From the sequence record MG752970.1: a DNA stretch of 64,000 bases, one strand, 5' to 3'. Below, in pieces: positions 58,431 through 58,915 of this stretch. The number at the start of each line of letters is the position of its first letter. Within the stretch, counting starts at the first letter, position 1. Made by a program: the position numbers and the translations under genes. The notes below the pieces were generated by a model. The model was not told the origin of the DNA. It did not search any database and worked only from the letters and a program-made list of their open reading frames with translations.

Positions 58431-58915
58431 TATCCGGAACCAGTGTAAAGCACGGAACCATCTCTTACCATCTATAAAGAATCGTTTTAAGAGATGTTCA
58501 GTTTCCATGGTGGAAAGCTGCCAGACTATTCTGATGCAATATGGCTGTAGTGAATCAGTCTGTAGGGGATGACAGTCAAGATCGGAGCACCACAAATCTC
58601 CGACTCTAGCCACCAATTATCGGCTCAGGTTTCCGTCCTGTACGGTCTATTCTTTTTGAGAAGATGGATTTTGAGTTTAAGCCGTTTATCGAGCATGCCC
58701 TCACATGCGTCGCCTCTGGTTCCGTGATGAGAATGGTCGACCCACTCTCGAGAGAGGAGCCCTGACTTAGCTTTTAACTCGTGCCTTAACTATTACTAGA
58801 AGCTGGGGTCACAGCTTACGTCGCTATTCGTCTACATCCAGCCACAACGTGGGGCCACTATCAGAGCAATGATTGCTCAGCAGATGTAGATATTTAAGAG
58901 TTCAAATCCGGAACA
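58431..58915 (-). ncRNA. Candidate large structured non-coding RNA (unclassified; boundaries approximate)
   Basis: No plausible CDS; many nested helices, e.g. TCTACATC/GATGTAGA, GAGCAA/TTGCTC, AGCTG/CAGCT, GCATG/CATGC, GGTGG/CCACC, TCGGAG/CTCCGA, CAGACT/AGTCTG, CATCTCTTA/TAAGAGATG. Confidence 0.5.

What the first reader, a model, noticed from the sequence alone, without database searches (positions are those of the whole stretch)
58431..58915. About 480-nt densely base-paired non-coding region: candidate large ncRNA
It contains at least eight helices, several nested into multibranch domains; one domain closes with GGTGG/CCACC followed by A. It is flanked by GTTCCGGAT direct repeats (plus-strand atccggaac at 58432-58440 and 58906-58914) and has a TTAAATA motif at 58891-58897. 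It lacks the signatures I know for tmRNA, RNase P and group I introns. Large phage ncRNAs near tRNA clusters (the GOLLD and ROOL classes) are a precedent, but I cannot assign it to either.
Basis: partly seen in the sequence, partly recalled or inferred. Interest (0 to 1): 0.7.

Follow-up and report, generated by a model that had tools for sequence, protein, structure and literature searches.

The report
New large folded jumbo-phage RNA
The flagged gap in Ralstonia jumbo phage RsoM2USA holds a gene for a roughly 440-base, intricately folded RNA with two pseudoknots that matches no catalogued RNA family, has a second diverged copy in the same genome and relatives in three uncultured phages; its job is unknown.

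Summary
The window is the first 64 kb of Ralstonia phage RsoM2USA (MG752970.1). The flagged stretch is real, non-coding and under strong selection. A diverged paralog lies at record 170290-170740. Homologs occur in a syntenic uncultured relative (B, both copies) and in two more distant uncultured jumbo-phage contigs (MGA, MGB).

In relative B the element is 96-99% identical while the flanking genes are 54-87% identical. About twenty helices keep pairing through compensating changes, including two pseudoknots; on six sequences 96.8% of cells pair, against 33-40% when partners are slid.

No Rfam family matches any lineage, and no reading frame is conserved. The thermodynamic z-score is unremarkable (-0.8 to -1.8), so the case rests on covariation.

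I read the RNA on the minus strand (about 75% sure), roughly 58887 to 58448. The reasons:
- GNRA tetraloops occur only on that strand.
- Two helices need G-U pairs on that strand.
- It starts at a TTAAATA variant of the phage's T4-late-like ATAAATA promoter, just after tandem terminators.

Function is unknown. My best guess is an independently transcribed, trans-acting scaffold or catalytic RNA. The scan has reported other large jumbo-phage RNAs on other DNA, but my look-ups showed no earlier report of this family.

The parts
58448..58887 (-). Proposed RNA gene (copy 1), about 440 nt, read 58887 to 58448. The ends are inferred, not mapped.
   Evidence: Extent of homology with the paralog and with MGA/MGB. 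The outermost covarying helices are Pe and PK1. No conserved ORF. 96-99% identity to relative B against 54-87% in the flanks.
58891..58897 (-). Promoter-like TTAAATA, a variant of the phage's ATAAATA (T4-late-like) motif. The start site is inferred about 6 nt downstream.
   Evidence: It is one of only two NTAAATA motifs in 58300-59200, both on the minus strand. Genome-wide, 52 of 87 ATAAATA lie within 70 nt upstream of ORFs (4.2 expected) and 14 of 37 TTAAATA (1.8 expected). The tail-tube gene carries ATAAATA and the PLD-like gene TTAAATA. The paralog has CTAAATAT and MGB has TATAAATAT at the same aligned place.
58834..58887 (-). 5' domain. Helix Pe (58834-58838 with 58883-58887) encloses hairpins Pe2 (58864-69/58873-78) and Pe1 (58841-43/58853-55).
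   Evidence: Pe covaries: ACATC/GATGT in copy 1, TAATT/AATTA in MGA.
58790..58817 (-). Adjacent hairpins Pd (58800-05/58812-17) and Pc (58790-92/58797-99). The Pc loop reads GUAA on the minus strand.
   Evidence: Pd stems: AAGCTG/CAGCTT, TCGCTT/AAGCGA, TGTGCTA/TAGCACA. Pc stems: CTA/TAG, TCG/CGA, GTC/GAC. On the minus strand the Pc loop is GNRA in all four lineages (GUAA, or GAGA in MGB).
58764..58785 (-). Hairpin P9 (58764-66/58783-85 and 58769-72/58776-79), which forms only on the minus strand.
   Evidence: It needs G-U pairs on the minus strand; these are A-C mismatches on the plus strand. G-U in copy 1 becomes A-U in relative B (58784). G-U in copy 2 becomes G-C in B2. MGB has compensatory GGU/ACC and GAU/AUC.
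58713..58757 (-). Arm P7 (58713-17/58753-57) enclosing P8 (58729-32/58746-49 and 58734-36/58742-44) and one strand of pseudoknot PK1 (58718-58726).
   Evidence: P7: CCTCT/AGAGG, CTCC/GGAG, GCCC/GGGC. P8: GAGA/TCTC, GATT/AATC, GACT/AGTC, GAC/GTC.
58451..58459 (-). 3' strand of pseudoknot PK1, pairing with 58718-58726 (9 bp).
   Evidence: Nine perfect pairs at the same relative position with three unrelated sequences: CACGGAACC/GGTTCCGTG, GCGCGGGCT/AGCCCGCGC and CCGAGCTTC/GAAGCTCGG. MGB has CGAACC/GGTTCG. B2 has one U-G on the minus strand, which is A-C on the plus strand.
58690..58712 (-). Hairpin P6 (58693-97/58704-08, outer 58690-92/58710-12). Its conserved 6-nt loop (58698-58703) pairs with 58564-58567 to form pseudoknot PK2.
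   Evidence: P6 stems: GCATG/CATGC, GGTG/CACT, CTGATG/CATCAG, GCTATG/CATAGC. PK2: AGGG/CCCT, TAAGGG/CCCTTA, AAGCG/CGCTT, GAGGG/CCCTC.
58621..58684 (-). Three-way domain: P5 (58621-25/58680-84) with hairpins P5a (58633-36/58642-45) and P5b (58650-53/58659-62).
   Evidence: P5: CGGCT/AGCCG, CAGGA/TCCTG, CAGCA/TGCTG, TGCGAGA/TCTCGCA. P5a and P5b covary. The P5b loop is GAGA in copy 2 and GCAA in B2 on the minus strand. Metagenomic variants 58634 C>T with 58644 G>A are compensatory in P5a.
58460..58613 (-). 3' half: P4 (58582-87/58598-603) closed by P4c (58569-73/58609-13), P3 (58522-31/58552-62), P2 (58502-07/58511-16) and P1 (58460-67/58488-95).
   Evidence: P3 has four unrelated stem sequences. 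P4 has four. P2 is swapped between copy 1 and relative B. P4c pairs only on the minus strand, through G-U.
58921..59070 (-). Four hairpins downstream of the upstream gene (59112-59384, minus strand). Three are followed by U-runs on the minus strand, which insulates the RNA gene from read-through. They are not part of the RNA as I draw it.
   Evidence: Fold of the minus strand gives z -3.7, with U-tracts after the stems. One passes the terminator scan. Stems are kept and loops changed in relative B. The paralog has one strong terminator at the same place.
58403..58433 (-). Own promoter (ATAAATA, 58433 to 58427), Shine-Dalgarno and ATG (58403) of the downstream gene RsoM2USA_82. This bounds the RNA at its 3' side.
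   Evidence: Motif statistics and motif-to-ATG spacing of 23 nt. AGGA lies 8 nt before the ATG. The annotated longer start at 58508 is lost in relative B.

Best explanation
Window 58448-58887 is a gene for a roughly 440-nt non-coding RNA, read on the minus strand. It belongs to a previously undescribed family found in a small clade of jumbo phages, and RsoM2USA carries two diverged copies.

The RNA folds into a compact multidomain structure:
- a 5' domain (Pe, Pe1, Pe2);
- the Pd/Pc pair with a conserved GNRA tetraloop;
- hairpin P9;
- the P7/P8 arm;
- hairpin P6;
- the P5 three-way domain;
- P4, P3, P2 and P1.

Two pseudoknots lock it together. PK1 joins the 3' end to the P7/P8 arm, and PK2 joins the P6 loop to the strand between P4 and P3.

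It is its own transcription unit. Tandem terminators stop the upstream gene, a TTAAATA variant of the phage's T4-late-like ATAAATA promoter starts the RNA, and the next gene has its own ATAAATA promoter.

I infer that it acts in trans late in infection, as a precisely folded scaffold for protein(s) or as a catalytic or self-assembling RNA, rather than as a leader for one gene.

Shown: non-coding, paralog and homologs, sequence conservation above the flanks, covarying helices and pseudoknots, no known family. Inferred: strand (about 0.75), promoter and ends (about 0.6), trans action (about 0.5). Molecular function is unknown.
For: Identity of the window.

Paralog and homologs:
- Paralog at record 170290-170740, opposite orientation.
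- MGA, relative B copy 1, B copy 2, MGB.

Conservation: identity to relative B is 96-99% at 58600-58899 against 54-87% in the flanking genes.

Covariation:
- On six sequences 96.8% of cells pair, against 77.6% in shuffles and 33-40% when partners are slid. 26 of 48 pairs change on both sides (0 of 500 shuffles).
- Curated table of 20 helices.
- PK1 is 9 bp with three unrelated sequences at the same place.

No conserved ORF. No Rfam match.

Strand:
- GNRA tetraloops number 6 on the minus strand against 1 on the plus strand, out of 36 distinct tetraloop hairpins.
- The Pc loop is GNRA in all four lineages.
- The P5b loop changes from GAGA to GCAA.
- P9 and P4c pair only on the minus strand. Single changes there turn G-U into Watson-Crick pairs.
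- PK1 in B2 has U-G on the minus strand.
- NTAAATA motifs occur only on the minus strand.
- Motif enrichment upstream of ORFs.
- Minus-strand terminators lie upstream.
- By eye, TGnTATAAT lies 60-80 nt upstream on the minus strand in MGA and MGB.
Against: - No transcript has been seen. No strand or ends are mapped. RNA-library contigs cover 58530-58848 only, at low depth, and could be DNA or simply the only part similar enough to align.
- Single-sequence folding energy is not better than shuffles.
- The strand evidence is mixed. In helices that exist on both strands, G-U pairs are 7 on the plus strand against 6 on the minus strand (leaving out P9 and P4c).
- The outer part of Pe has tandem U-G/G-U on the plus strand in copy 2.
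- The plus-strand model scores MGA higher (35.7 against 20.6 bits), although MGB scores higher with the minus-strand model (58.2 against 38.1).
- In MGB the neighbouring genes lie on the other strand.
- The paralog's CTAAATA variant is not enriched upstream of genes, and MGA lacks the motif.
- No terminator is seen at the RNA's 3' end in copy 1.
- Only four lineages are known, so the statistics are thin and the alignment for one search was fitted to the model.
Confidence: 0.6

Rival explanations
1. The same structured RNA, but transcribed from the plus strand. It would be antisense to the neighbouring genes in RsoM2USA copy 1 and in MGA, and co-directional with them in MGB.
For: - All Watson-Crick helices form equally well on both strands.
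- Pe extends to 9 bp on the plus strand, with G-U closing pairs and tandem U-G/G-U in copy 2.
- A U-G could close P8 in five sequences.
- The plus-strand model scores MGA higher.
- MGB's neighbours lie on that strand.
- A terminator-like hairpin with a U-rich tail sits at the plus-strand 3' end in MGB.
Against: - Only 1 of 36 tetraloops is GNRA on that strand, against 6 on the minus strand.
- P9 and P4c would carry A-C mismatches.
- The single substitutions 58784 (relative B), the P9 change in B2 and the PK1 change in B2 would create or repair mismatches rather than wobbles.
- There is no promoter motif on the plus strand.
- The hairpins downstream are minus-strand terminators without plus-strand U-tracts.
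Confidence: 0.18
2. A cis-acting leader or regulatory RNA for the downstream gene RsoM2USA_82. The 3' tail GGUUCC...GGAACC could mask its ribosome-binding site.
For: In copy 1 and relative B the RNA ends about 45 nt before the gene 82 ATG, on the same strand, with no terminator between them. GGUUCC (58437-58442, minus-strand reading) is complementary to the stretch that holds the Shine-Dalgarno.
Against: - The paralog runs into the 3' end of a convergent gene, so it has no gene to control.
- In MGA the next gene is about 210 nt away and is unrelated.
- Gene 82 has its own ATAAATA promoter between the RNA and its start.
- Gene 82 itself diverges fast (63% amino-acid identity) while the RNA is 96-99% conserved.
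Confidence: 0.08
3. A DNA-level element: a replication origin, packaging or recombination site, or an array of protein-binding sites, with the hairpins forming in single-stranded DNA or not at all.
For: - There are two copies per genome.
- Palindromic TCCGGA motifs lie at the flanks.
- The strand signals are ambiguous.
- No transcript has been shown.
Against: - Long-range and pseudoknotted pairings kept by double compensatory changes (PK1 9 bp, PK2, P5) are the signature of a folded single strand with tertiary structure.
- GNRA tetraloops are an RNA motif.
- A promoter and upstream terminators frame the element.
- There are no iterons or AT-rich unwinding tract. GC is locally raised.
Confidence: 0.05
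4. A decayed or mobile genetic remnant with no present function: an intron or ribozyme relic, or a MITE-like insertion bounded by the 9-nt direct repeats.
For: Nine-nt direct repeats flank copy 1. The element sits at non-syntenic places in different phages.
Against: - It is the best conserved stretch of its neighbourhood.
- The repeats are not kept in relative B or in the paralog.
- There are no terminal inverted repeats.
- Neither Rfam intron or ribozyme models nor host-gene exons are present.
- Covariation across about 70%-identical copies shows continued selection for the fold.
Confidence: 0.03

Closest known systems
GOLLD and ROOL RNAs (Rfam RF01998, RF03087; Weinberg et al. 2017, PMC5737381; cryo-EM preprint 10.1101/2024.12.08.627333)
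   Same: Large, ornate, pseudoknotted non-coding RNAs of unknown function. They are often carried by phages or prophages and lie near tRNA genes. This RNA sits about 2.6 kb from a tRNA cluster and about 540 nt from a TilS-like gene.
   Different: There is no sequence or structure match. It is shorter (about 440 nt against about 600-800) and occurs in lytic jumbo phages of Proteobacteria, with two paralogs per genome. Self-assembly into cages is untested here.
Bacterial RNase P RNA (RF00010, RF00011)
   Same: Similar size, multidomain fold with two long-range pseudoknot-like helices, GNRA tetraloops, and a phage with 44 tRNA genes. Copy 1 has AAGUCAGGGCUCC, which from memory resembles the CR-I stretch of E. 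coli M1 RNA.
   Different: No covariance-model hit even at E<=10. The CR-I-like string is not kept in the paralog, and MGA lacks that segment altogether. I treat the resemblance as chance.
phi29 pRNA (packaging RNA, RF00044)
   Same: A phage-encoded structured RNA that acts in trans with virion proteins. The paralog here lies in the virion-gene module beside the tail-tube and head-completion genes and behind a late-type promoter motif.
   Different: pRNA is about 120-174 nt, comes from an early promoter and has a different fold. There is no model match, and no evidence here of any role in packaging.
Other large structured RNAs of jumbo phages reported by this scan (for example s1-156024, s1-155930, s1-156020)
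   Same: Large intergenic RNAs (roughly 340 nt to 1.3 kb) that are kept by covariation. Some occur in several copies per jumbo-phage genome. None has a Rfam family or a known function.
   Different: Those are in Erwinia-type and E. coli-type jumbo phages. I could not test homology with them, and nothing in my searches links them to this family.

Membership tests
GOLLD (RF01998) / ROOL (RF03087) | Match to the family covariance model | tested here: not met
   No hit at gathering score over the whole window. No hit at E<=10 on 58200-59300 or at E<=5 on the paralog, MGA and MGB loci.
GOLLD / ROOL | Homo-oligomeric assembly (nanocage) | not testable with these tools
   The RNA exceeds the 300-nt limit of the complex predictor. 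It needs native gels or cryo-EM.
RNase P RNA (RF00010/RF00011) | Covariance-model match with conserved regions CR-I to CR-V and helix P4 | tested here: not met
   No hit. A CR-I-like string in copy 1 is not conserved in the paralog and is absent in MGA.
tmRNA (RF00023) | tRNA-like domain plus tag reading frame | tested here: not met
   ARAGORN finds only six tRNAs in the window and none here. No Rfam hit.
Group I / group II introns (RF00028, RF00029) | Model match and insertion within a host gene with flanking exons | tested here: not met
   No hit. The element lies between complete genes, after terminators and before a promoter.
IscB/TnpB guide RNAs (HEARO / omega RNA) | Adjacent IscB/TnpB-type nuclease gene | tested here: not met
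   The neighbours are a TilS-like PP-loop protein, proteins of unknown family, a PLD-like protein and a tail-tube protein. No protein is shared among the four contexts within about 8 kb, apart from one 525-aa protein near copy 2 and MGA.
Riboswitch or leader RNA | Constant position upstream of a regulated gene | tested here: not met
   The paralog faces the 3' end of a convergent gene. The downstream genes differ in every lineage.
New family proposed here | PK1, PK2, P3-P6, Pc (GNRA loop), Pd and Pe in the same order, with conserved joining strands (plus-strand AATTATC, GTTTAT, CTYACA loop) | tested here: met
   Met in copy 1, copy 2, B, B2 and MGA. Met in MGB except for Pe, whose pairing I could not place in register there, and with AATTATT and ATTTAT in place of the first two joining strands.

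The most novel reading that the evidence does not exclude
This is the founding example of a new class of large, doubly pseudoknotted phage RNAs with a catalytic or self-assembling function, made late in infection from a virion-type promoter and kept in two diverged copies per genome. The function could be a ribozyme acting on host or phage RNA, or an RNA-only assembly like ROOL and GOLLD. In that reading it is a new RNA machine of jumbo phages rather than a regulator.
Probability: 0.2. Interest if true: 0.9.

Novelty: new variant of a known kind. Interest (0 to 1): 0.72.

Why it matters
Large RNAs with intricate conserved tertiary folds are rare, and nearly all that have been solved turned out to be ribozymes, ribonucleoprotein cores or, recently, RNA-only cages.

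This one is in a cultured, genetically tractable lytic phage of a laboratory-friendly host system. It comes in two copies that differ by about 25-30%, which is a built-in covariation control. It is more conserved than the proteins around it. That makes an open question directly testable: what do ornate phage RNAs do? The tests are ordinary ones, namely deletion, pull-down, probing and cryo-EM.

The work also gives RsoM2USA a promoter motif (ATAAATA and variants) and corrects two gene annotations beside the RNA.

Tried and rejected
1. Long-range plus-strand helices. These were GCACGG with CTCGTGC, and AGGGGATGA (58565-73) with TCGTGCCTT (58779-87), both suggested by RNAalifold. I dropped them. 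The same covarying bases are explained by PK1 and PK2, and MGA lacks that segment once Pc and Pd are aligned correctly.

3. The direct repeats as target-site duplication are not conserved.

4. GGATTTGA as an upstream promoter element. It is mostly a coding motif.

5. A hammerhead-like GAUGA core. There is no GAAA partner and no Rfam hit.

6. Exact and gapped DNA patterns in IMG/VR, JGI metagenomes and GTDB genomes gave only MGA copies plus chance hits in coding DNA: L035, L063 and L064-L066.

7. Homologs of the PLD-like neighbour led to plasmid-like contigs without the RNA.

8. Covariance-model scans of XacN1 and of 47 related IMG/VR contigs found only MGB and MGA. A 10-bit hit in one contig (L163) is unconvincing.

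9. blastn of the MGA and MGB elements against cultured phages found nothing.

10. RNA runs for MGA: none was listed.

11. Reads laid on the window. Short contigs from four RNA-labelled runs (two probably DNA) lie only on 58530-58848. Relatives' flanks fall below the 85% cut-off, so this says nothing firm about transcription.

12. Comparing alifold energies of the two strands was uninformative.

13. I did not read the region under another genetic code. The amber suppressor tRNA alone does not show recoding, and no frame is conserved anyway.

Full report
**Where we are.** The window is the first 64 kb of Ralstonia phage RsoM2USA (MG752970.1, 343,806 bp), and window coordinates equal record coordinates. 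This is a lytic jumbo myovirus with 44 tRNA genes and no annotated RNA polymerase; its closest cultured relative is Xanthomonas phage XacN1 (PMC8504454).

The flagged stretch lies in a 708-nt gap between two minus-strand genes. Downstream is RsoM2USA_82. Its likely true start is the ATG at 58403, preceded by AGGA; the annotated start at 58508 has no ribosome-binding site and is lost in a relative. Upstream is an unannotated 90-aa ORF at 59112-59384. A TilS-like PP-loop gene follows at 59431-60477. tRNA genes lie at 45-56 kb.

**Checking the observation.**
- The region is non-coding. Every frame has several stops (3 to 14) in each of six homologs, and no frame is conserved.
- Folding energy alone is not remarkable: z is -1.8 and -1.6 for the two strands of 58405-58920, and -0.8 for the minus-strand RNA as I bound it.
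- GC content is locally raised, 0.46-0.50 against 0.35-0.43.
- No Rfam family matches at gathering score or at E<=10.

**Homologs.**
- *Paralog.* A BLAST search of the phage's own record found a second copy at about 170290-170740, in the opposite orientation, in another unannotated gap between a PLD-like gene and gene 263. The best-aligned stretch is 74% identical, with conserved blocks over about 450 nt.
- *MGA.* A covariance model of the best conserved half (R1, from alignment A4) found a full-length homolog in a 102-kb uncultured phage contig (sequence). A spaced pattern of conserved blocks found the same sequence in three more contigs.
- *Relative B.* A 63%-identical homolog of gene 82 led to ENA contigs of a syntenic relative holding copy 1. 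The PLD-like neighbour led to its copy 2, here called B2.
- *MGB.* Scanning 32 IMG/VR contigs that encode a related tail-tube protein found one more homolog, on a 185-kb contig.
- *Absences and near relatives.* XacN1, the other related contigs, IMG/VR, JGI metagenomes and GTDB genomes gave nothing further. Public soil, plant, rhizosphere and wastewater runs hold near-identical or 90-97% identical pieces.

**Selection.** Against relative B, the flanking genes are 54-87% identical per 100 nt. The element is 90% identical at 58400-58599, 96% at 58600-58699 and 99% at 58700-58899. Identity falls again to 75-84% in the terminator zone. The differences that do occur cluster in hairpin P2, which is swapped compensatorily, and in loops.

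**Structure.** On the six sequences aligned to R1:
- 96.8% of cells form standard pairs, against 77.6% in shuffles and 33-40% when partners are slid by 1-3 columns.
- 26 of 48 pairs change on both sides (0 of 500 shuffles reach this).
- The covariation score is 0.50, against 0.20 in shuffles and at most 0.09 when slid.
- Caveat: this alignment was fitted to the model.

A curated table checks about twenty helices against the raw sequences of all six homologs (coordinates). It shows three or four unrelated stem sequences for P3, P4, P5, P5a, P5b, P6, P7, P8, Pc, Pd and Pe.

Two pseudoknots stand out.
- PK1 pairs 58451-58459 with 58718-58726. It is nine perfect pairs at the same relative position with three unrelated sequences, and six pairs in MGB. 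It crosses P7.
- PK2 pairs the conserved P6 loop with the strand between P4 and P3. A C-to-G change in MGA's loop is matched by a G-to-C change in its partner.
- Metagenomic variants add a compensatory C-G to U-A change in P5a.

**Which strand.** Watson-Crick helices cannot tell the strands apart. Within the shared helices, wobble pairs are balanced, 7 on the plus strand against 6 on the minus strand. Evidence for the minus strand:
- *Tetraloops.* Of 36 distinct tetraloop hairpins, six are GNRA on the minus strand and one on the plus strand, where about one is expected by chance. They sit on covarying stems. The Pc loop is GUAA in five sequences and GAGA in MGB. The P5b loop is GAGA in copy 2 and GCAA in B2, so two loop changes keep the motif.
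- *Strand-specific helices.* Hairpin P9 and the closing helix P4c pair only on the minus strand. Single substitutions between close relatives turn G-U into A-U (58784) or G-C there, and MGB shows double compensation.
- *PK1 in B2.* Its single change gives U-G on the minus strand and A-C on the plus strand.
- *Promoter and terminators.* See the next section.

Evidence against the minus strand:
- Copy 2's tandem wobbles lie in the outer part of Pe on the plus strand. This is explained if transcription starts inside that stretch.
- MGA scores higher with the plus-strand model.
- MGB's neighbours lie on the opposite strand.

I put the minus strand at about 0.75.

**Transcription signals.**
- ATAAATA is a promoter motif of this phage. 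Of its 87 occurrences, 52 lie within 70 nt upstream of an ORF (4.2 expected), typically 19-30 nt before the ATG.
- The variants GTAAATA (20 of 63) and TTAAATA (14 of 37) are also enriched. CTAAATA is not.
- The tail-tube gene and gene 265 carry ATAAATA, and the PLD-like gene carries TTAAATA. The motif therefore behaves like a T4-type late promoter (the T4 comparison is from general knowledge).
- In 58300-59200 there are exactly two NTAAATA motifs, both on the minus strand. TTAAATA at 58897-58891 sits at the head of the element. ATAAATA at 58433-58427 sits 23 nt before the gene 82 ATG.
- The paralog has CTAAATAT and MGB has TATAAATAT at the aligned position.
- Upstream of copy 1, four hairpins lie at 58921-59070. 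Three are followed by U-runs on the minus strand. The paralog has one strong terminator there.

The layout is therefore: gene, terminators, promoter, RNA, promoter, next gene. That is a self-contained RNA gene. A start about 6 nt after the motif (near 58885) leaves a 5-bp Pe, which is exactly the part of Pe that covaries.

**What it does.** Nothing in the neighbourhoods is shared among the four contexts, apart from one 525-aa protein near copy 2 and MGA. So there is no obvious protein partner. The paralog has no downstream gene to regulate. High sequence conservation, two pseudoknots and a conserved GNRA loop point to a defined three-dimensional fold that acts in trans. It could be a scaffold for proteins, a ribozyme, or a self-assembling RNA like ROOL and GOLLD. 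I cannot choose among these with the tools at hand.

**Novelty.** No Rfam family matches, no paper in the searched library describes it, and nothing similar turned up in cultured phages. It is a new family within the known kind of large ornate phage-borne RNAs.

**Earlier scan notes.** The scan had reported other jumbo-phage RNA families on other DNA. On this genome it had reported a Y RNA with a phage Ro60, an amber suppressor tRNA and a virion-type promoter motif. My look-ups showed no earlier report of this family.

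Noticed in passing
record 170290-170740 (outside the window; L004:3291-3741, minus strand of that locus): Second, unannotated copy of the RNA gene, about 25-30% diverged. It lies between the PLD-like gene RsoM2USA_262 and gene 263, in the virion-gene module beside the tail-tube and head-completion genes.
   Followed up: yes
window 57864-58508: RsoM2USA_82 is annotated from 58508, inside the RNA gene. The ATG at 58403 has an AGGA Shine-Dalgarno and an ATAAATA promoter 23 nt upstream. The 58508 ATG is absent in relative B, so the annotated N-terminal 35 residues are probably not real. 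Genes 81 and 82 are tandem paralogs.
   Followed up: partly
window 59076-59384: RsoM2USA_83 is annotated on the plus strand (59076-59294). The minus-strand ORF 59112-59384 (90 aa) matches a 91-aa gene called at the same place and strand in relative B. It has TGTTATAAT (extended -10) upstream and terminators downstream, so the annotation probably has the wrong strand.
   Followed up: partly
whole RsoM2USA genome, for example window 58427-58433, 56029-56035, 50539-50545: ATAAATA, with variants GTAAATA and TTAAATA, is a strongly enriched promoter-like motif 19-30 nt upstream of start codons (52 of 87 against 4.2 expected). It occurs before virion genes and resembles the T4 late promoter TATAAATA. 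The genome paper reports no promoters.
   Followed up: partly
window 58921-59070: Four tandem hairpins after a 90-aa gene. Three have minus-strand U-tracts (z -3.7). Stems are conserved and loops changed in relative B. This is an unusually heavy terminator block.
   Followed up: partly
window 58432-58440 and 58906-58914; relative B; record about 170735: The palindrome TCCGGA recurs at the edges of the RNA gene: on both sides in copy 1, doubled on one side in relative B, and as ATCCGGAT at the 3' side of copy 2. It could be a protein-binding site or a duplication scar. It remains unexplained.
   Followed up: partly
window 59431-60477: TilS-like PP-loop protein (tRNA(Ile)-lysidine synthetase family) encoded by a phage. 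The genome paper says its tRNA set lacks tRNA-Ile. Homologs are seen in PA5oct-like and other jumbo phages.
   Followed up: no
L031:1787-1795 and L157:1750-1758 (minus strands): Perfect extended -10 promoters (TGnTATAAT) lie 60-80 nt upstream of the RNA in both uncultured homologs. This hints that those phages may also transcribe it with unmodified host polymerase.
   Followed up: partly
window 58530-58848 in public runs X13, X16, X18, X20: Short contigs 90-98% identical to the RNA, but not to its flanks, occur in wastewater metatranscriptome and other RNA-labelled libraries. DNA runs from soil, plant and rhizosphere hold half or more of the region's sampled 31-letter words, so relatives of this phage are widespread.
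   Followed up: partly
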